Positions 4,064 through 18,707 of a stretch of DNA of 64,000 nt are shown here, one piece after another; position 1 is the stretch's first letter, and each line of letters starts with the position of its first letter. The stretch covers positions 1 through 64,000 of the forward strand of contig JAKMXF010000296.1 in the NCBI GenBank assembly GCA_024704765.1, read 5' to 3'. Made by a program: the position numbers and the translations under genes. The notes under the pieces were generated by a model, which saw only the letters and a list, made by a program, of their open reading frames with translations, was not told the DNA's origin and searched no databases. The DNA is from Oopsacas minuta. Taxonomy: Eukaryota; Animalia; Porifera.

Positions 4064-4354
4064 GCTTAATTATCCTAGCGAGCGGGATGTATCCTCCTAT
4101 CCTCTGGATCCGCCACTGCATTAGCTTAGGTCACGCAAATATAGAATCTATGATTCGTGTTCTTGTCTCTTTGATAGTTTCTACCAACACAAATTTATAC
4201 GTCTACAAGAGGAGAGACCCTGTTTGACGAAAAGTAAAAATACTGAACACATTCTTCGTACAGTTAGGTGATCTCTAGCAGGTCACATGGGTAGGGATGG
4301 CGGAAATGCTGTTAATAGCTACAATTCTCCAAACAATTAATTGTTTAGACTATA

Positions 4355-5662
4355 CAGGGTGGCTCCAAAGTTCTGATACAAGATCACGATTAATATACAA
4401 CCATTATCAGGAATTATTCTCAATGGTTTGCTCTTCCATAACATACCTTATACGCTTCCTAACAAATATTATTTCAATTTGGCGTATTCTATTTCGAAAA
4501 AAAATTGTGATTGACCATGGAATCTGAGAGGTCAGCAATTTTTGAGTTGCATGTAGCGGGGAAAAGTCCATCAGAAATTTTGAAACTGCTGAATATTGCA
4601 AAATGACGTAGGGCATTTATCTACAGGACGATAAATCGATATAAGGAAACTAGGGACACTGTAGACAAGCAGAGATCTTGTTGTCCATGATCTGTAACGA
4701 CCCAGGTCTCAAGAAAGGGGTGCGAGAACGTTTTCGGCGGAACCCACACCGTCCGATGATGAAAATGGCCTTGGGAGCTCAATATATCTCGCCGAGCAAT
4801 ACAAAAGGTTGTCAAAAGGGACCTAGGAATGCGCTCTTTTAAACGCAAAAAGGTACAATTCCTATCTGGGTCGGTGAAAGAAAAGAGAGTGTCCCGGAGC
4901 AAGAGCCTACTTGCTCAACACGCTATTGGGATTCTCGAAAATATTCTTTTCTCAGATGAGAAAATTTTCACCATAGAAGAGGCTACAAATTGCCAAAACG
5001 ACAGAGTCATCTCGACCTCAGTTTCAGCGATCCCTGATAAGTTCGGATATATCAGTCGGATGAAGTAACCACTGTCGGTTATGGTTTGGGCTGGGGTCTC
5101 TGCTGTTGGCCGGACACCACTGATTTTCATTACCCAGAAGTGAAAATCAATGCCAAAACATACTGAGAGCTTGTATTAGAGCCTGTGGTAAAAGGTCTGA
5201 GCCAGACCATGTTTTCTGGACAGCTATTTGTCTTCCAACAAGATGGTGCTCCCGCCCATACGGCCAATACGACCCAAGATTGGCTGAAGCACAATACTCC
5301 CAATTTTATACACAAAGATGAATGGCCACCATACAGTCCCGATTTAAATCCTATGGACTATTCTGTATGGTCTATCTTGGAAAATAAGGCTTGTTCTGTG
5401 TCACACAACACAGTTAGCTCTCTAAATATTTCCTTGTGTCGAGAATGGGAGAAGATACCCCAAGAAACTCTGCATGCCGCAGTAGAAGGGTTCCCGAACA
5501 GACTCAGGGCTGTCATTTCCATAAAGGGTGGTTATATTGAAATGACTAGGCAATATCTTCCTAATAGCATGTATTAATTTTATATAGAAAATCAATAATG
5601 TAGGTCATGCTGAAAAATATTATAGACAAAATGGTTTGTATCAGAACTTTGGAGCCACCCTG
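4355..5662 (+). mobile_element. Tc1/mariner element, DD37D (maT-like), transposase disrupted
   Basis: TIR CAGGGTGGCTCCAAAGTTCTGATACAA at both ends with TA TSD. Fragments LFSDEKIF and QQDGAPAH...WPPYSPDLNPMD, with 37 residues counted between the last two Asp. Confidence 0.95.
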
Positions 5663-6174
5663 TATATGAATTTGTTTGGATTCAACAAATAATAACATAC
5701 TGTACGCAAATGTGCAGCTCCCCATGGGTCCGAATCCTTAATTTGACTAATTTTTGTCCTTCAGAATTTTATCAGCTGATGTATTTATCCATGTGAAAAA
5801 TATTTGAACCCGATCTATTTTAGTTCATGAATGCACAATTCGGTGTGAAAAGACAGAAATAATAACACATATTGTAACTATGACAACGATATGCCAAACA
5901 AATTCAGAAAAGTATCAATAGAGCCATTGTTTGCAGACTGTATTATATTTTTCACTACTCACATCAAACCTAACAACTCCATTTTCATATTTTAGCTTAT
6001 TATTTTCATGGCAACACCAATTCTGATATTTCTTTCTCTTCTGATTCTAAAACTACCAATGAGTTATGGGAGCATGGTGACGACAATTCTCAATCTAACA
6101 ACACATCCAGCTCATCCATTGATATTGAAACGTTTAGCTCTCAGTCTTTTAATTCTCCAGGTTCTTCCCAACAA

Positions 6175-8194
6175 TTGACACCAGGCATAGCGTCTCCTAT
6201 GACAGTATTGAACCTCTCTTCCCAGGAATCTGAATTTTTCTTCCCCCCAATGTCGAGCACTCCTATCCCACCGCGAAAACGAGGACGACCTTCGAAAGGC
6301 TCAAAGTTCCGAGGAAATCAATATACAAAATCTATTCACGAAACTGACGAGATTTCCTCACTCGATAACTCAATTCTACCTTCACCTACTAGAACCTCTG
6401 TGAAACGTGAAGACTGTCATTCCTCGCCGTGGCTATACATCACGAATATCCGCTCTTATCTATCAATCGAAACGTGACGTAACTTTCGAATGTAACAACA
6501 CCACAAAACATATAAAAGCTTCTAAACCATCTGGAATGAGGATACTTGATATCGGCATAATTGCAGAAGCCATGACGAAGATAGCATGCAGTCAATGTCA
6601 CACTGGATACTTATTATTATTCGAATCTGATTTTCAACATGGATGGCAAACAGATTTCTACCTAAAATGCTCTCATTGTAACCACCAATTTGCCGATTTC
6701 CCTTCATCTAAACCTATGGACGTTCCATTTTTGAAAGAACAAAATTCGTAAATGTTCCACTTCCAAAACGAGAACAAAACGAAGTAGCAATGAGCTCTAT
6801 CCTAGCTGTACACTGTTCAGGACTTTCATGGAGAGATCTACACAAATTCTCAACCATATTCGATATGGTACGATATCCATAAACCGAATTGTAAGAAAAA
6901 CTATAGCGGATCTAGTCAGTCAATGGAGCCAGCAGCAGCAAAAATGATTTGGAGTCGGTCATCTGAAAAGAGAAAACTATGCTCCATAACTTTTATCGGG
7001 GATGGAGACTCGAAATCATACAGCGAAATCTTGCAACTGAATCCCTATGACTCTATTCCCATCCACAAAGAGGAATGTACCACTCACGTTTCGAAACGAC
7101 TAAAGAAGACTTTGTGTAAGATCAAGAAGAACACTGCCAACAAGTCTTATGTTCAGTGCAAACTTTCTGAACCCAAAGCTGACTATATCTCTTCAACCTA
7201 TTCTGCCGTTATCTTTCAAACAGGGGCAAATCAACTGCTGAGTTGTGTAAAGCTATTTCTATCATTCTGGACCATGTTTGCGGTAATCATTCCAACTGCC
7301 CAGAAGACACATGGTGCCGATGGCGACAATCTTCATCCTCAGCAAAACCACCACCCCCTCCAATACCAACTACACACCTGTTGAACAAGCCAAAATTCGA
7401 GAAGTATTCCAAACATACGCTTCGAAAGAGTTTTGCAGCCACCTAACTCTTGGGCTGACTCAAAATGCCAACGAGTCACTACACAACGTTATCTGGAACT
7501 TTGTCCGAAGGCTAAGTATGTTTCCCCTCAAAGTCTTAGAATCTCAAAAGCCATCGCAGTTTCGATTTTCAATGAGGGCGAACTATGTCTATATGGTTTT
7601 ATGCGTGATCTAAATCTAAAACCTTCTCCTCTCTCCTTTAGATCAGTCTGCCTGCGTGAAGAAGTGAGAAAGAGACACCGAAACTATATCAAGAAAGTGA
7701 ACGTACACTGACGAACACGCAGACAGAAACTAATCAAGCTCCGGCATGAAAGGGATCTTCTCAGACAAGAAGGTGGACGTAGCTACAAGTCCAGTGGCTT
7801 TAGTGCTGAAACCTTCAGCAAGCCATCAAAACCCCTTCAAGTTCGAGGACAAAGAAGACCTAGAAGAAGCACATCTTCCCGAGGGACTACCAGCAGAGGC
7901 AAAGTTGTGAAACGATGTCTCATTCCAACAAGGGACTCTGATGATTCTGAAGACTCAACCACTACTTCCGACAATTCTCTAGCTGATAATGAAGTCGATA
8001 CTATCCCAAAAGAAACCTGCGTTATACGCCAACTCACACACCCTCCATCTCAAAGACAACAAGCCATATCTATTTGGGCTAGGGTGAAATGGCTAAGATG
8101 TACCCGATGCGACCGATCATTCCACCAGCGATGCACAGAACTGGACAGGGGGGCTGAGGATAGTTCTTTCATCTGTTTTAGTTGTTTAACCTGA
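6175..8194 (+). pseudogene. Mutator-like/Kolobok-type DDE transposase with N-terminal AT-hook and C-terminal PHD finger, frameshifted
   Basis: Consecutive fragments give RKRGRP, FRGNQYTK, CSQC...CSHC, FIGDGDS, KEECTTHVSKRL, TQNANESLHNVIW and WLRCTRCDRSFHQRC...FICFSC. The region around the first catalytic Asp appears deleted. Superfamily is assigned from motif recall only. Confidence 0.75.
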
Positions 8195-8399
8195 TATATT
8201 CCCTAAATTATGCACATTGATCGACCAACTAATAGCATTTTTATTTTTTTGGCCGCATGACGGATATTGTCCCGATATAGATTTTTTGAAATCTATTGGT
8301 TGATCACTTGATAATCTCCATGATATACCCCCGTCTTGATTGGAGATTATCACATCTTTTGACTGATTTTTTATTGTTTGTTATCAGTCAAAAGCAAGA

Positions 8400-8456
8400 T
8401 GGTGTCTTAAGACAAGGCGTAGCTTGACTGATGAGTCCTAGCGGGACGAAACACCA
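8400..8456 (+). ncRNA. Type III hammerhead ribozyme
   Basis: UGGUGU-C(8406)-UUAAG-loop-CUUGA-CUGAUGA-GUCC-UAGCG-GGAC-GAA-ACACCA. Stems I, II and III all pair, the core is complete and the cleavage triplet is GUC. Confidence 0.87.
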
Positions 8457-8539
8457 CTATAATATGTATATATTCAAAAAATATATTTTATGAATCTTTA
8501 ACTTCAATTGTCTCAAAACTATGTTTTTCGCCATATGGG

Positions 8540-8805
8540 CCAATTACTTTTGAAAAAGACTGTTTCTTTTGCTCTGAAAATTTAGGGGAAGTATTTATAC
8601 AATGTTATTTGAAATCTGGACCACATTTGGAATGAATGAACGAATAATTCTCATGATATCACACCCTAAGACCGGTTTTTAGCCTATTTTTGCCAGACCC
8701 CACATCAAACGTTAATACCTTCTCTCCAGAAATTAGAACTACATATTGTTAGCATATATAACAATTTATAGGTCTTAGGCAATAGTCTTCTTCAAAAGTA
8801 ATTGG
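8540..8805. repeat. 25-bp inverted repeat pair (MITE or subterminal region) ending near CT-TTAA at 8821-8826
   Basis: CCAATTACTTTTGAAAAAGACTGTT (8540-8564) matches the reverse complement of 8781-8805 at 23/25. Confidence 0.6.
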
Positions 8806-10080
8806 GTAATATGTCCCGAACTTTAATGTTACGTCTACTGGAGGACTTTTGTCCCCCCCCTTTTCATGCCCAATTCGTAATACACACTAGATACATCGGG
8901 GTTTATTATTATTATTATCTCATAGTTTGGCCAATGCAAACGAGCTGGAAAACAATAAACATGTATAATGGCATATACTTTAGAAAATAGCCCATACCGT
9001 AATACAAAGTTCGCGGTGAGTTCATCGAAATTCCTGGAGATTAACCGTAACACTTACGGAGATCTATGATTTTCACGGATCATTTCAAATCTCACCCTGA
9101 GTCTAATCCGGCCCTACGTACAACAGTGGAGAACTTAATAATTAAGATGTCTATGATATGCTTAGATTCTGATTTGTAAAAGGCTGCATATTTTTCCACT
9201 TTTGTTGTTGACTAAAACATGTGTGCAACAATAAGTGTGAGTGCTATAACTAGTGAAAGTTTCATTAACTGAGGTGTAATATGTCTTGAGCTAGTTTATA
9301 CAAATACAAAATGTGTTATATTTTTCAGGCGAATAAATATTCTTATGTTATGAATTGATAGTGTTGGACAGATGCAAGTACATTTTGGACGATGAATCAG
9401 GGCTCCTGATCTAAAACATATTATAACTATCAATTTTCAAGATTTCATTGATATTCAATAAATTAATGTATTCGTACATACAAGTATACAAAGTAGCGTA
9501 TTTCTATTTTCAATTTGAATACTTAAAACTCTTTCTTTTTGTACAATATTGCGTGGCACTTGGTAATCATGCTTCCAAAGTCCGAACACATGCCCAAGCC
9601 ACGCTAGTGGTAGTTAAATTGAATGAAAAAGTATATATTCATAATATTATTTGGTATCTGTTCTTCTCTTTCTGAAATTCTCTCATCAATGGGAAACCTC
9701 ATATTGTTTAAACCTTTATGAGCTCTTCACTCATCCATATTTTACCAAGAAACATATCTTAGATTTCCCTCAATCGTTGAACAATAGGCAAAGTGTAAAT
9801 ATATAAAACGTATATTGTTACTTTAAATAGAGTAATTTATTTGGAAATTTTTGACTTTTTATTGAAATTTGATTCTTCAAGATGGGATGTTGTTTTGGTA
9901 ATCAGAAAAGTGTAAGTAATATTTTAGGTATGACATCTGTCCAATGTAGGATTTTTCAATGTATTTGTGGCCTTAGTGCACTATCCAATTTTCTATTCAA
10001 TTAATGCATTTTGTTTCACATACTATATATTCAAGCAGAAATTAATCTTACGGCGAACGTATTGTTGTTAATTAGATACA

Positions 10081-14378: not shown

Positions 14379-14997
14379 CTAGCGCGCTTCGATTGCAGGG
14401 GCGCTGTGCGACAGCTTAGTGCCTCAGGTTAGATTAATATCAAATAGATAAATGTTTTGGTCAATAGGCGACGGGATAAACTGGGCACTTCGTACCTTGG
14501 GTGTATATGATAGCAGAAAATTTAAGATTTTATTATCCATGGCCCATCCAAATTACATTCAATGGCCTTATGTGGTGACCCTGGAGATGCCATGTCGCTG
14601 TTGGTTAGTAATCTCGGCACTTCGTCCCTCGTGTGTTAAGAATTAAAAAATTTTATTTGGTACAGTCACGATGACGTACTAATCCCATGTTGACTTAGCT
14701 TATGGTAAGAATCATGGAGTCAGGACATTTGTCATATTGAGGGGTACTTGTGATTCTAATTTCATTAGATGAATCCCGACCATAACTTCTATCATGTATA
14801 TTGGCTGTGGATAATAATGTGATTTTTCGAAAATCCAAAAAGGTGATAATGACGTCATAATTTTGTCATAGGAGTGAATTTTCGTCCAAGACTCTTATTT
14901 GTCTGAGCCAGGCCCAAAATACCCCTTGTATGCCAATAATCATCCCTGGGATCTTCCAGTTTCTTCAAACATACAAACATATATATACATATACATA
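14379..14997 (-). mobile_element. Non-autonomous Helitron-like repeat, family B
   Basis: The minus strand ends in a GC-rich segment followed by GCGCGCTAG-T. Homologous blocks lie at ~31230, ~47900, ~57811 and ~62400. The 5' side has an (ACAT/ACAAAC)-type tract. Confidence 0.6.
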
Positions 14998-14999
14998 TA

Positions 15000-17900
15000 C
15001 GAGGATCAGTCCAAAAGTTTTGTCGTACACAAAAAATATAATAACAAATTTAATCAAACTTTCACAGTTTCTTAAAGTAACGACCAAAACAATCTATGCA
15101 AAGTTGTATACGATGAAACCAACTGTCGAAACAATTATGCCATTTTTCCTCTGGCAGGCTCCAAAGGGCCCTTCAAATGCCAGACGAGCCTCTTCAGGAT
15201 TCTCAAACCTTATTCCACGGATCTTTTCCTTGATTGTTGAGAACAAGAAAAAGTCGCATGGAGCTAAATCTGGACTGTAAGGTGGATGCGATACCAACTG
15301 GACCGAATTTTCAGCCAGGAAGTCCAATGTTTTGCCTTCCGTGTGTGCAGATACATTATCGTGGTGAAGGAGAAGTCCTCTGATACCGGTCTTAGGGCGA
15401 CGAGAACTCCAAGCTTCCAATGCCTTGGGTAGGCAATTGTTAATGTACCAATCAGCATTGACGGTACGACGATCCTCGAGAGGAATTATTGCTATTGGGC
15501 CAGTCTTACAGAAAAAAGCAGCCACCATCTTCTTCCCAACGCTGCGAGCCCGGCGAAATTTAACAGGGAGATCTTCGGCAGGAAACACCCAGATTAAAGA
15601 TTGCTGCTTTGTTTCCGGATCGTACCGATAGATCCATGTCTCATCACATGTTAGTATGTCGTAAACTCGTTTAGACTCTCCTCCTGTAAATTTCTTTGAG
15701 CATAAACTTGCACCATTCTACCCTTGCCTCTAATTGCATTTCAGAGAGATTATGAGGGATCCATCGGGCCACAAGCCTTCTGACACCAAGATAATCATGT
15801 AGAATAGTATTGATGGCGGCTTTCCCGATCATTAGGGTCTCAGCAAACTGCTCATAGTTAATGCGTCTATCCTCTCTGATTAATGTCCTGGCAGCAGCAA
15901 TAGTCTTTGGAGTGAAGGCGGTTGAAGGTCGCCCAGACCTAGCTTCATCTTGTAGTGACGTTCTCTCCCTCCTGAAATTTAGATATCAGCGCTCCACTGT
16001 ACACTTAGATGGCGCTTGATCTTGGAAAGCTTCCACCAAGTTATCATGACTCTGCTCAACTGATATCTTACGCATAAAGTCATAAAACATCATAGCTCAA
16101 AAATCCCTTCTTTCCAGTTCCATTCAGTAATTATAAAATCTGTATATAGGCTTATGGATAAAATAGCGCTACTCAGAAAATAAGTGTTGAATATAGCTCA
16201 AATTAAAAGTAGAGTCATTATATATATATCTAAGTATATAGCAGGGTCGGCAAACTTCCCGCCAACGGGCCAAAATAGACAAATTGCATAAGATTGCGGG
16301 CCAGATGGGATACCATCGAAAACTCGTTTAGATTTTTGTAATTTATCAATTGATTAAGTACGATTATTATACAAGTATTAAGTAGGTAGATTTAGAATAT
16401 CCATTTGTTTATGATAATTATTTTGCATTATAAAATTAGACATACAAAAATATTAATGTTGATGTGATGGATGATACTGCCCTACTTTGGATAGCGCCTC
16501 TATGTCTGGTTTTAGGTTAGAGGTTGCCAATCGTAGCACACTGTCTAGGTGATTTTCGCTTAACCGTGTTCGCAACTTGCTTTTTATGTATTTCATCTTC
16601 GAGAAGAGTTGTGCACAAACGTATGTACTCCCGAAGAGAACTGCAACCTCCTTTGCATGTTTCATTAGTGAAGGAAATCTTTGAGGAGTTATATAATGTT
16701 GATAGAATTCGAGTAAAGGCACATCTCGAAATCTTGATCTGAGCTCACTCGAACTTTGGAGCTCAATCAGTTCCATTTGTAAATTTTCTGGGGCGTCACA
16801 TATTTCAACATCAAATACGGCGGCGAAGTAGCTAAAATACTTACAATGCTTATCCATATCTGCGAATCGAGTGTTAAACTGATCTTTGAGATCAGATATG
16901 AATTCGGCGTAACAAGAAACATCACATGGTTGGTGTGAACGAAGTGTAGGGAAATTAATGCAATTACTCTCTTTCAATTGAAGCTCCCATAGTTGTAACT
17001 TAACTTCAAATGCATAAATGTGTTCATAGAGGACATTGATGAACTGGTTCATTCCTTGTATTTTCAAATTTAGCATATTTAGATGATTAGTGATATCCAC
17101 CAGAAAGGAAAAATCTGTCATCCATTTCGCATCACTGAGCTCTGGAACTTCCATCCCTTTTTCCTCAAAAATTCGTCAATTCAGCTCTCAATTGGTAAAC
17201 TCTCTGCAACATTGCACCTCTACTTAACCAGCGCACTTCGCAATAATATAACAAATCGCCATATTGGTTATCCATCTCTTCTAACATATGCTGAAATTGA
17301 CGATGATATAATCCTCTTGCACGCACAAAGTTCACAATTTTTATGACTACCCGCATTACTTCCTGCATCTTCAGAGATTTTGCGCACAAGGGCTCGAGAT
17401 GGATTATACAATGTGTTTTTACCAGTTTTCTTTCAATGCCAGCATTTCTCATTTCTTTTTCTATCAAAGAAACTGCTCCCTTCACCTTTCCGATCATAGC
17501 TGGAGCACCATCTGTCGTTCCCCCACAAATATTACTTAGATTTAAGCCCAGGCTACCTATGACACTCATGATTCCTTGGAATATATTCTCACCAGTAGTG
17601 GTATCCTTTAGTGAAACCAAACTTGCCAATTCTTCTGTAATGTCAAACGTTGCATTGATTCCTCTCACAAAAATTGCAACCAGAGCAATATCAGTCGCAT
17701 CAGTGCTCTCATCAAGTGCAATTGCATATAATTCAAATTGTTGAGCACGCTCTTGTAATGTTGTCCTGATATCTGAAGACAAATCTTCAATTCTTCGGGT
17801 AACGGTTCTTGCAAGGCAGACTAATCTTACCAAAAAGATCTCTTTTTTCTGGACATATAATATCAGCCACAGTTAGAAGACACTCCTTCACAAATTCACC

Positions 17901-18651
17901 ATCAGTGAAAGGTTTCATGCGTTTCCCAATGAGTTCGCTAACAGCGAAACTAGCACGTGTAGTATTCTTTAACTCAGAAGTATGCTGTAAAAATTTACTC
18001 TGTTGCTCAGTTAAAGACCTTTGGAGAGATTCGATCTTACTCCTTCGCGTGGCACCGGTAAGAAAATCGAAATTTTTCGAATGCTTCGTCTCGTAGTGTC
18101 TCTTCAAATTGGACTCCTTCATCACAGCAAGAGATACAGCACATAAAAGGCAGGTGGGCAATCTTCCCGGCATAATAAAAAATACTTCTCGTCCAACTTT
18201 CCTTAAATACGCGATTTTCAAGATCTACTTTCCGCCTTTTAGATGTTGATGCCATTATTTAATTCACAATGAATTTGAAATTTGATCTGAGTATTGAAAC
18301 TTGAATCATGTGTATTTATCTACAATTCTACATACTATATTATGCTGAGATCAAATCCAAATAGTGTCAGAATACATTTGTGTGGCATCACTAACACACT
18401 CATTCCATTCACCCATTCTTCAATATGGCCTCCAAATTGCCGTAGAGGCCATAATAAGTGTTTCTGAAACAATTTTGGATTATAATTGAAAGAGCCTGAA
18501 AAGTAGAATAATTTCTGAAAGAGTCGAGCGAGGGCCGGGTAAAATCACCTCGCGGGCCGGAGTTTGCCGACTCCTGGTATATAGTGTTGTATTTATTTGA
18601 TTGAAGACAAAATGGCACCTTTGTACGACAAAACTTTTGGACTGACCCTCG
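15000..18651 (-). mobile_element. mariner element (DD34D), interrupted by a hAT insertion
   Basis: 30-bp TIRs CGAGG(A/G)TCAGTCCAAAAGTTTTGTCGTACA with TA TSD. Fragments TCDETWI and LHHDN...HPPYSPDLAPCDFFLF (15094-15588). Confidence 0.95.
16242..18576 (-). mobile_element. hAT element, GTF2IRD2/SPIN-like transposase (frameshifted)
   Basis: TIRs CAGGGTCGGCAAACT / AGTTTGCCGACTCCTG with an 8-bp TSD GTATATAG. Fragments from 18255 to 16453 include ALDESTD, TTDGAPAM, HCIIH, EVRWLSRG and FGSTYVC. Confidence 0.95.
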
Positions 18652-18707
18652 TATAAATATAAAACTGGTTAAATACCGTTACTTACAATTAGATGAATCC
18701 CGACCAT

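What the first reader, a model, noticed from the sequence alone, without database searches (positions are those of the whole stretch)
6175..8826. Possible ribozyme-equipped DNA transposon: cleavage site coincides with a TTAA 3' of the transposase
Seen: the ribozyme is on the transposase sense strand ~205 nt after the stop at 8194. The scissile bond falls exactly at GTC|TTAA, and a second CT|TTAA lies at 8821-8826. Established: Kolobok elements duplicate TTAA and begin with two purines, which both candidate ends satisfy on the minus strand (GA, AG). Hammerheads are known from Penelope-like retroelements and retrozymes, and I am not aware of them as parts of cut-and-paste transposons. Inference: the ribozyme could end or destabilise the transposase mRNA, block read-through, or process an RNA intermediate. 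The left end of the element was not found.
Basis: inference. Interest (0 to 1): 0.82.

Follow-up and report, generated by a model that had tools for sequence, protein, structure and literature searches.

The report
Hammerhead ribozyme inside sponge Kolobok transposon
A complete self-cutting RNA motif (type III hammerhead) is a built-in, conserved part of a cut-and-paste "Kolobok" DNA transposon of a glass sponge, sitting just after the transposase gene; such ribozymes were known only from retroelements, and what it does here is still untested.

Summary
A full type III hammerhead lies at 8399-8457 (+), 205 nt after the stop at 8194, and GTC|TTAA is at 8406|8407.

The general reading, a ribozyme-equipped TTAA transposon of Kolobok type, is supported. 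Both proposed ends are wrong. Neither TTAA at 8407 nor at 8823 is a terminus.

Other copies show the real ends: TTAA|GGAGTCTTGCCGCGAA ... TTCGCGGCAAGACTCC|TTAA. The window copy is a dead autonomous element. It is cut at 5723 on the left and is 9 bp short on the right (9016).

About 30 copies in this 61-Mb genome, mostly 1.1-1.7 kb non-autonomous derivatives, keep the ribozyme. Related elements in two other assemblies carry it in the same place, and there it is the best-conserved non-coding block (73% against 44-48% identity).

A sister variant with compensatory helix changes lies downstream of integrase-type transposases. One intact relative in this genome lacks the ribozyme.

The most likely job is cis-cleavage of the transposase transcript's 3' UTR, for 3'-end formation or dose control. 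This is inferred, not shown.

This scan had already noted hammerheads in other transposons of this genome. I found no paper on this setting.

The parts
5723..5790 (+). Remnant of the element's left arm. It matches positions 303-371 of the ~370-bp left arm of full copies and includes the B-box-like part of a degenerate tRNA-like segment. The true left terminus (TTAA|GGAGTCTTGCCGCGAAAT) is missing from the window copy.
6175..8194 (+). Decayed transposase gene, with frameshifts and stops and pieces in several frames. It includes an N-terminal zinc ribbon (6407-6751), the DDE core with GDGD and CxxH (6878-7213, PF20700), a Cys/His cluster HxxCPx5WC (about 7270-7320) and the catalytic-E motif NANESLHN (about 7461-7484).
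   Evidence: criterion from PMC9587614
8084..8194 (+). C-terminal PHD finger and the stop codon (TGA at 8192-8194).
   Evidence: PF00628, 24.3 bits; the same architecture is in the intact 853-aa relative L043:5590-8151
8309..8352 (+). Hairpin 1, 12 bp in the window copy. The basal 7 bp (UGAUAAU/AUUAUCA) are kept in other lineages.
8356..8394 (+). Hairpin 2 (12 bp), ending 5 nt before the ribozyme. The pair 8363:8387 covaries between lineages (C-G, U-A, A-U).
8399..8457 (+). Type III hammerhead ribozyme. The predicted cleavage is between C8406 and U8407.
8458..9016 (+). Right arm of the transposon, non-coding. It holds a strongly conserved island at about 8507-8529. The inner 7 nt of the right TIR (TTCGCGG, 9010-9016) are present. 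The outer 9 nt (CAAGACTCC) and the TTAA target are missing in this copy.

Best explanation
The window holds a dead, end-truncated autonomous copy (5723-9016) of a Kolobok-type cut-and-paste DNA transposon of a glass sponge. The family has a TTAA target duplication and 16-20-bp terminal inverted repeats beginning GGAGTCTTGCC. It encodes a DDE transposase with a C-terminal PHD finger.

Shown: the type III hammerhead at 8399-8457 is an integral part of this element. It sits in the 3' untranslated region on the transposase sense strand. It is preceded by two hairpins and followed by a ~620-nt right arm. It is kept in all deletion derivatives and in diverged lineages from other assemblies.

Inferred: when the element is transcribed through the transposase gene, the ribozyme cuts the RNA at 8406|8407. 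This separates the coding part, which then ends in two hairpins and a 2',3'-cyclic phosphate, from the right arm, the TIR and any downstream host sequence or poly(A) tail.

The most likely role is therefore to define the transposase transcript's 3' end and so control transposase dose. It could act as a poly(A)-independent end or as a self-limiting cut. Whether the net effect stabilises or destabilises the message is open.
For: Element identity:
- Left ends read TTAA|GG(A/T)GTCTTGCCGCGAAAT. Right ends read TTCGCGGCAAGACTCC|TTAA in 13 of 16 copies.
- Copies with both ends have matching 4-bp flanks: three with TTAA/TTAA, one with TTTA/TTTA, and two that differ by one base.
- An intact 853-aa relative in the same genome (PF20700 at 112.6 bits, plus PHD) is also bounded by TTAA|GGAGATCGCC... 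inverted repeats.
- Non-autonomous forms equal left arm + window 5723-5790 + 8323-9016, or left arm 1-168 + filler + 8120/8296-9027. The window's transposase therefore lies between the same arms.

Ribozyme:
- The full RF00008 match has all core bases.
- About 30 family copies exist, most with an intact core.
- Between this variant and the sister variant, 4 base pairs in helices I and III change on both sides and stay paired. In total 91.7% of cells are paired, against 28-45% when the partners are slid.

Conservation of the pairing:
- A complete 5.2-kb element in another assembly (L063) is about 70% identical in DNA. It has the same-type ribozyme on the sense strand, 650 nt from its right TIR.
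- L064, on a 3.5-Mb contig, has an intact-core ribozyme 174 nt after the ORF pieces, with a G-C to A-U change in helix II.
- L068, from a third assembly, has a decayed one.
- Across the four lineages the ribozyme block is 73% identical, against 48% upstream and 44% downstream. The conservation peak coincides with the ribozyme.

Context:
- The motif is always sense to, and downstream of, the transposase (C296, C199, L063, L064, L068).
- No AATAAA or ATTAAA lies between the stop and the ribozyme in the window.
- A structured hairpin with a covarying pair lies directly upstream.
Against: - Self-cleavage and transcription were not tested, and no RNA data were available.
- The Rfam score is below the gathering cut-off.
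- The predicted fold is no more stable than shuffled sequence (z = -0.96).
- This lineage is extinct in the genome. No copy has an intact ORF.
- The copies in L063 and L068 have core-inactivating changes.
- Not all relatives carry the ribozyme. The intact C338 element and loci L062 and L065-L067 show none, so it is not required for this kind of transposase.
- Non-autonomous copies, which make no transposase, also keep it. This fits passive carriage in the right arm. Within the young sub-family its decay rate is not significantly lower than that of the flanks (1.7% against 3.2%, p = 0.10).
- The compensatory changes rest on few independent lineages.
Confidence: 0.55

Rival explanations
1. Passenger or relic. 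The hammerhead was captured once, for example from a retroelement, into the right arm of an ancestral element. It persists because the right sub-terminal region is needed in cis as DNA (transposase binding), not because the RNA is cut.
For: - All non-autonomous derivatives keep the whole ~700-bp right arm, including the ribozyme, although they encode nothing.
- The right arms of diverged lineages are colinear and of equal length. They share a 22/22 identical island that is better conserved than the ribozyme.
- Within-family decay of the ribozyme does not differ significantly from that of the flanks.
- Some related elements do without it.
Against: - Between lineages the conservation peak sits exactly on the 59-nt ribozyme (73% against 44-48%).
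- The changes that do occur in helices are compensatory. This is expected for an RNA structure and not for a protein-binding DNA site.
- A sister variant occurs in an unrelated (integrase-type) transposon group at a fixed distance from the ORF.
Confidence: 0.2
2. The cut serves the downstream product. Cleavage releases the right-arm RNA, which starts at U8407 with a 5'-OH, as a functional non-coding RNA or a circularisable RNA. This could be a regulator of the element or a decoy for silencing.
For: The right arm keeps a constant length (about 600-650 nt) and has conserved islands in diverged lineages. The whole arm is retained in every derivative.
Against: - There is only one ribozyme per element, so no unit-length RNA can be excised as in retrozymes.
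- No second ribozyme or direct repeat was found.
- Most of the arm is poorly conserved (44%).
Confidence: 0.1
3. An independent ribozyme-bearing mobile element (a retrozyme, a SINE like Schistosoma Sm-alpha, or a Penelope-like LTR) that happens to sit next to a transposase pseudogene.
For: - Most copies of the 8296-9016 module are not next to a transposase.
- Some copies carry perfect tRNA-type A and B boxes upstream (TGGCCTAGTGG, GGTTCGAATCC).
- A separate type I-like hammerhead family with 507-nt direct repeats exists elsewhere in the genome.
Against: - The tRNA-like piece is internal, about 250 nt from the end. ARAGORN does not call it.
- The units are bounded by inverted repeats and TTAA duplications. 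They have no poly(A), no simple-repeat tail and no LTRs.
- The junctions show the units are internal-deletion derivatives of the transposase-bearing element.
- The same ORF-ribozyme-right-arm order is kept at 70% divergence inside one pair of TIRs (L063).
Confidence: 0.05
4. A sequence that merely resembles a hammerhead and has no catalytic activity.
For: The score is below Rfam's gathering threshold. The fold is not unusually stable.
Against: Every invariant core position is present. The three helices are supported by compensatory changes and there are at least 113 genomic hits. The motif is the conservation peak across lineages.
Confidence: 0.05

Closest known systems
Kolobok superfamily of DNA transposons (Kapitonov and Jurka; Xenopus T2-MITE/XKol, PMC6004289; KolobokP, PMC9587614)
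   Same: - TTAA target duplication and termini 5'-RR..YY-3'. One relative even reads TTAA|AGGAG, like the Xenopus AGGRR motif.
- DDE transposase with a CxxH motif and a Cys/His cluster before the catalytic E.
- Abundant non-autonomous derivatives.
- The superfamily has been reported from sponges.
   Different: No Kolobok described in the papers read carries a ribozyme. This lineage has a C-terminal PHD finger. Pfam's nearest model is named 'Mutator-like'. Placement on a tree with reference Kolobok proteins was not done.
Retrozymes and viroid-like RNAs with type III hammerheads (PMC4918200, PMC7761336)
   Same: The same ribozyme class and topology, with helix III open and loops on helices I and II. 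Both are carried by a mobile element.
   Different: Retrozymes are retroelements with a ribozyme in each LTR or repeat, and they excise a circular RNA. Here there is one ribozyme per element, inverted-repeat ends, a TTAA duplication and a DDE transposase. The review states that type III motifs are mostly from plants and type I from animals.
Penelope-like elements and Terminons with minimal type I hammerheads (Cervera and de la Pena 2014; PMC6431247)
   Same: A hammerhead is a conserved part of an animal transposable element, near its 3' region.
   Different: Those are reverse-transcriptase elements with minimal type I motifs in terminal repeats. This is a full type III motif in a cut-and-paste element.
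Ribozymes that process retrotransposon transcripts (HDV-like in R2 and L1Tc, cited in PMC7761336) and the discontinuous hammerhead in mammalian CLEC2 3' UTRs (from my own knowledge)
   Same: A self-cleaving RNA embedded in a protein-coding transcript that trims the message in cis. This is the mechanism proposed here.
   Different: Those act at the 5' end of retroelement RNAs or in host genes. A 3'-UTR ribozyme in a DNA-transposon transposase gene has not been described in the papers I could search.
Hammerhead cassette downstream of integrase-type ('Ginger') transposases in the same genome
   Same: The same ribozyme class, the same helix II and a loop-1 motif AAGGC. Both lie sense to and downstream of a transposase.
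   Different: It has another cleavage triplet (GUA) and other sequences in helices I and III. It has a conserved ~145-nt upstream domain instead of the two AT-rich hairpins, and belongs to another transposase superfamily.

Membership tests
Hammerhead ribozyme, type III (Rfam RF00008) | Invariant catalytic core (C3 U4 G5 A6 N7 G8 A9, G12 A13 A14) and an NUH cleavage triplet | tested here: met
   CUGAUGA, GAAA and GUC are all present at 8399-8457. They are kept in most of about 30 copies.
Hammerhead ribozyme, type III (Rfam RF00008) | Three helices around the core, with helices I and II capped by loops and helix III open | tested here: met
   The cmscan alignment spans model positions 1-54 of 54. 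In total 91.7% of pair cells are paired and 6 pairs show changes on both sides.
Hammerhead ribozyme, type III (Rfam RF00008) | Score at or above the curated gathering threshold (48.5 bits) | tested here: not met
   36.9 bits, so the default scan was blank. The shortfall comes from a long loop 1 and helix sequences unlike the plant and viroid seed.
Hammerhead ribozyme, type III (Rfam RF00008) | Self-cleavage activity | not testable with these tools
   This needs an in vitro transcription and cleavage assay.
Kolobok DNA transposons | [quoted passage not shown] | tested here: met
   TTAA is on both sides in L003, L004 and L005. L007 has TTTA on both sides. L009 and L011 differ by one base. 13 of 16 right flanks read TTAA. 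The same holds for the intact relative and for L063.
Kolobok DNA transposons | Termini 5'-RR ... YY-3' with terminal inverted repeats | tested here: met
   GGAGTCTTGCCGCGAA ... TTCGCGGCAAGACTCC.
Kolobok DNA transposons | DDE transposase with C/DxxH and a zinc-finger-like Cys/His cluster between that motif and the catalytic E (absent in MuDR, P and hAT according to PMC9587614) | tested here: met
   By inspection only. The window has ECTTH, then HVCGNHSNCPEDTWC, then NANESLHN. The intact relative has ECLAH, then HKFCPKGVGSWC, then NNNEAAHN.
Kolobok DNA transposons | Groups with reference Kolobok transposases in a phylogeny | not tested
Mutator/MuDR (MULE) transposons | Match to a Mutator transposase profile | tested here: met
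   PF20700 scores 53.7 bits for the window piece and 112.6 bits for the intact relative.
Mutator/MuDR (MULE) transposons | 8-11-bp target site duplication (established knowledge) | tested here: not met
   The duplications are 4 bp, TTAA.
Retrozyme | Hammerheads in two flanking direct repeats or LTRs, or in tandem units, that delimit an excisable RNA | tested here: not met
   There is one ribozyme per element. The ends are inverted repeats.
tRNA-derived SINE (Sm-alpha-like) | A 5'-terminal tRNA-derived Pol III promoter, a 3' A-rich or simple-repeat tail, and variable target duplications | tested here: not met
   The A and B boxes exist but lie about 250 nt inside the left arm. ARAGORN is negative. 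The ends are TIRs with TTAA.

The most novel reading that the evidence does not exclude
Glass-sponge cut-and-paste transposons of at least two unrelated superfamilies (Kolobok here, integrase-type 'Ginger' elsewhere in the genome) have each recruited a type III hammerhead together with an upstream structured RNA. This module makes the transposase mRNA's 3' end without polyadenylation, or meters transposase dose. It would be a ribozyme-based mode of gene expression not known for any DNA transposon, and the module may be exchanged between transposon families.
Probability: 0.3. Interest if true: 0.85.

Novelty: new variant of a known kind. Interest (0 to 1): 0.7.

Why it matters
Genomic hammerheads have so far been tied to RNA-based mobile elements: viroid-like RNAs, retrozymes and Penelope-like elements. 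In those, RNA cutting is part of the replication cycle.

A conserved hammerhead inside DNA transposons that move without an RNA intermediate implies another use. Most simply, it would shape the transposase message.

This would add a new layer to how transposons control their own activity. It would also extend full type III hammerheads to an early-branching animal.

The result is a short, testable sequence: about 100 nt of hairpin plus ribozyme. It could be tried as a compact poly(A)-independent 3'-end or dosage element.

The finding also corrects the element's annotation (true ends, superfamily, non-autonomous derivatives).

Tried and rejected
Readings rejected:
- SINE reading. Perfect tRNA A and B boxes upstream of some copies suggested a tRNA-derived SINE like Sm-alpha. 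I rejected this. Similarity continues about 250 nt further left to an inverted-repeat terminus with TTAA, and ARAGORN finds no tRNA.
Similarity runs through both in all copies.
- MULE classification from Pfam alone. The TSD is 4 bp, so I rejected it.
- A right end just after the ribozyme (about 8476). Several alignments break there. L013 and L016/L027 are explained by foreign insertions with 7-8-bp duplications. L025 and L026 are old fragments without recognisable termini. This is left as unexplained coincidence.
- Coding potential in the right arm. tblastx hits occur in all frames on both strands, so this is nucleotide similarity only.
- RNAalifold on the 160-nt module did not recover the hammerhead fold and gave a weak consensus.

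Searches that came back blank:
- The Rfam default scan of the window was blank.
- No ribozyme was found near the intact C338 element or near most other PF20700 loci.
- No ribozyme was found in L062 or L065-L067 from other assemblies.
- The tRNA-like piece is not found in L063 or L064.

Steps not completed or not used:
The contexts of the sister variant were therefore judged from coordinates only.
- The costly word-index protein search and the metagenome and viral scans were not used.
- No complex or structure prediction was needed.
Full report
**Observation**

The window comes from a 61.46-Mb, 365-contig assembly. Earlier notes of this scan name it as the glass sponge Oopsacas minuta.

- The last transposase ORF piece ends in TGA at 8192-8194.
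- GGTGTC|TTAAGAC places the GUC triplet at 8404-8406 and TTAA at 8407-8410.
- CTTTAA lies at 8821-8826.

Rfam's default scan of the window is blank. A permissive scan aligns 8399-8457 (+) to the whole type III hammerhead model RF00008 at 36.9 bits. That is E 1.1e-6 locally and 5.9e-5 genome-wide, below the gathering score of 48.5. All invariant core bases are present. The minimum-energy fold is close to the three-way junction but is no more stable than shuffled sequence.

**The protein**

The ORF pieces between 6407 and 8194 lie in several frames, so the gene is decayed. They match Pfam PF20700 'Mutator-like transposase' at 53.7 bits and a PHD finger at the C-terminus.

An intact 853-aa relative with the same architecture exists on contig C338 (L043:5590-8151, minus strand). 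It scores 112.6 bits for PF20700 plus PHD, and is about 30% identical to the window pieces.

**The element and its true ends**

The stretch 8296-9016 is repeated at least 30 times at 77-91% identity. In other copies similarity runs 9 nt past window 9016 and ends ...TTCGCGGCAAGACTCC, followed by TTAA in 13 of 16 copies.

One group of copies (L007, L009, L012, L024, L027, L028) joins a ~370-bp left arm directly to window 5723-5790 and then to 8323-9016. A second group (L002-L005, L008, L010, L011, L014) joins the first 168 bp of the same left arm, about 690 bp of unrelated filler and the last ~40 bp of the ORF to 8296-9027.

The left terminus reads TTAA|GG(A/T)GTCTTGCCGCGAAAT. This is the inverted repeat of the right end.

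Six copies have both ends. Three show TTAA/TTAA, one shows TTTA/TTTA, and two differ by one base.

The window therefore holds an autonomous-type copy. It is cut at 5723 on the left, next to a young mariner that ends at 5668. It lacks the outer 9 bp of its right repeat. The 1.1-1.7-kb copies are its internal-deletion derivatives.

Every copy continues across both sites.

**Superfamily**

A 4-bp TTAA duplication and GG...CC termini are the hallmarks of Kolobok as listed in PMC9587614 and PMC6004289. They do not fit Mutator.

The intact C338 relative is likewise bounded by TTAA|GGAGATCGCCCCTCAAAA inverted repeats. A complete relative from another assembly reads TTAA|AGGAGTCTTCGG.

Both the window pieces and the intact protein have CxxH, then a Cys/His cluster (HxxCPx5WC), then the catalytic-E motif. 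PMC9587614 reports that cluster for nearly all Kolobok transposases and as absent from MuDR, P and hAT. I checked it by eye only.

I file the element as Kolobok-type, with the Pfam label as the nearest profile. A tree against reference proteins was not made.

**Is the ribozyme part of the element, and is it selected?**

Within the genome, most family copies keep an intact core. Across 12 full right arms the ribozyme ranks in the top 5% of 59-nt windows for conservation. Its mismatch rate is 4.8%, against 8.8% for the rest of the arm. Copies share ancestry, so p = 1e-4 is only indicative.

Inside the youngest sub-family the difference is not significant: 1.7% against 3.2%, p = 0.10. This is the expected pattern if selection acts on master elements and not on inserted copies.

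I built a covariance model from both ribozyme variants of this genome (A1, R1). It finds at least 113 hits.

The second variant (GUA|UUGCG...CGCAA) has a different, strongly conserved ~145-nt upstream domain. At six loci it lies 2.7-3.1 kb downstream, on the same strand, of integrase-core (PF00665) matches. This partly confirms earlier notes that place it in 'Ginger' transposons.

Between the two variants, four base pairs of helices I and III differ on both sides and remain paired. Helix II and a loop-1 motif are shared.

**Other assemblies**

I ran a profile-free search with a 186-aa transposase piece from the 70%-identical copy on C99. It gave close relatives, and I looked up their contigs.

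- L063 (ENA ERZ25072730) is a complete 5.2-kb element with TTAA-flanked repeats. Its ORF is about 70% identical in DNA to the window's. It has a window-type hammerhead on the sense strand, 650 nt from the right end. Its core carries inactivating changes.
- L064 (same sample, a 3.5-Mb contig) has an intact-core ribozyme 174 nt after the ORF pieces. The first pair of helix II is changed from G-C to A-U.
- L068 (ERZ25766962) has a decayed ribozyme in the same position.
- L062 and L065-L067 have none.

L064 shares other repeat families with this genome at 83-95% identity but is not colinear with it. It is probably a related sponge, though the species is not known to me.

Across the four lineages the ribozyme block is 73% identical, against 48% upstream and 44% downstream. 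The sliding-window maximum coincides with the ribozyme.

Hairpin 2, just upstream, keeps its stem, with one pair covarying C-G, U-A, A-U. The right arms are colinear and of equal length. They share a 22/22 identical island 50-72 nt after the ribozyme.

**Limits of the association**

Only the window's lineage of PF20700 loci carries the ribozyme: C296, a 66%-identical copy on C199, and fragments on C244, C151, C105 and C9. The intact C338 element and about 20 other loci show none. The ribozyme is therefore an accessory of some lineages and not a requirement of the transposase.

**Mechanism**

Shown:
- The ribozyme is sense to the transposase and lies 205 nt after the stop.
- Two hairpins precede it, and there is a single ribozyme per element.
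- The window has no canonical poly(A) hexamer between the stop and the ribozyme.

Inferred:
- Transcripts through the transposase gene are cut at 8406|8407.
- This leaves a coding RNA that ends 12 nt after hairpin 2 with a cyclic phosphate, and discards the right arm, the repeat and any read-through.
- This would give either a poly(A)-independent 3' end or a self-limiting cut. I cannot tell which.

Rivals are passive carriage in a right arm needed as DNA, a function of the released right-arm RNA, and an independent ribozyme element. The last is contradicted by the ends, the duplications and the conserved order within one pair of repeats.

**Comparison and novelty**

The review PMC7761336 assigns type I hammerheads to animals and type III mostly to plants and their circular RNAs. 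It lists retrozymes, Penelope-like elements and Terminons as carriers. PMC6431247 mentions hammerheads only for Penelope-like elements and Terminons.

Full-text searches combining hammerhead with DNA transposon, terminal inverted repeat, transposase, sponge or Oopsacas found no report of a hammerhead in a cut-and-paste element. The library is incomplete, so this is absence in what I could search.

This scan has already reported type III hammerheads after transposase genes on other DNA of this genome, mainly in 'Ginger' elements, and one note mentions a Mutator-like transposon.

This report adds:
- the element's true ends and its Kolobok assignment;
- the non-autonomous derivatives;
- the distinct hairpin-plus-ribozyme variant;
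- its conservation in other assemblies.

**Verdict**

The function is inferred only.

Noticed in passing
L009:1370-1460, L027:1380-1450 and others; window 5723-5745 holds the 3' part: A degenerate tRNA-like segment lies inside the transposon's left arm, sense to the transposase. It has perfect A and B boxes (TGGCCTAGTGG, GGTTCGAATCC) and a complementary 7-bp acceptor stem (GTCCTGC/GCAGGAC). ARAGORN does not call it, and it is absent from relatives L063 and L064. It could be a captured tRNA, a Pol III promoter or an RNase P/Z processing signal that marks the 5' side of the message.
   Followed up: partly
G000:C24:79400-80300 (L049) and about 15 other loci listed: This is a second, unrelated hammerhead family (CUGAUGAGCUGGAUAAAUAGCCAGCGAAAC). 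It is type I-like and gives a weak match to Rfam HH9. It sits in 507-nt direct repeats next to an (ATT)n tract, so it looks like a retrozyme or Penelope-like terminal repeat.
   Followed up: partly
window 8469-8476 (TATATTCA), seen in L013 and in L016/L027: Two independent foreign insertions of about 0.9 and 1.3 kb hit the same AT-rich site 12-19 nt after the ribozyme, with 7-8-bp duplications. Old fragments L025 and L026 also stop within about 25 nt of it. It may be an insertion hot spot or an unexplained boundary.
   Followed up: partly
window 8507-8529; L063:6736-6757: A 22-nt island (ATCTCAAAACTATGTTTTT...) lies 50-72 nt after the ribozyme. It is identical between elements that are otherwise about 44% alike in this arm. 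It is a candidate transposase-binding or RNA-processing site.
   Followed up: no
window about 4300-5668: A Tc1/mariner element has ORF pieces at 4829-5577. Its right end (5600-5668) matches dozens of loci at 97-99%, so the family is young and probably recently active. It abuts the truncated left side of the Kolobok copy.
   Followed up: no
L063:6300-6560: Between the ORF and the ribozyme, this relative has a minisatellite of the palindromic hairpin-1 motif (GATTATC...GATAATC), repeated about 8 times.
   Followed up: no
L063:7285-8060: A ~770-bp MITE with TTAA|GGACACCAGAGGAG inverted repeats is inserted exactly at the TTAA that flanks the right end of the 5.2-kb element. Its GGACAC terminus resembles the left end of one Oopsacas derivative group.
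   Followed up: no
G000:C155:342926, C199:259883, C296:326306, C304:227395, C314:110098, C326:210713, C328:136936, C329:83479, C332:259060, C343:970238, C351:61096: Eleven hits of the sister ribozyme variant have the same model score (66.0 bits), which suggests one young transposon family. Two of them lie 3.1 kb downstream of integrase-core matches. One hit lies on the same contig as the window, outside the window.
   Followed up: partly
window 14997-16241 and 18577-18654: Another repeat family is present here. A 91.6%-identical copy is inserted into the Kolobok derivative in L012:2025-3329.
   Followed up: no
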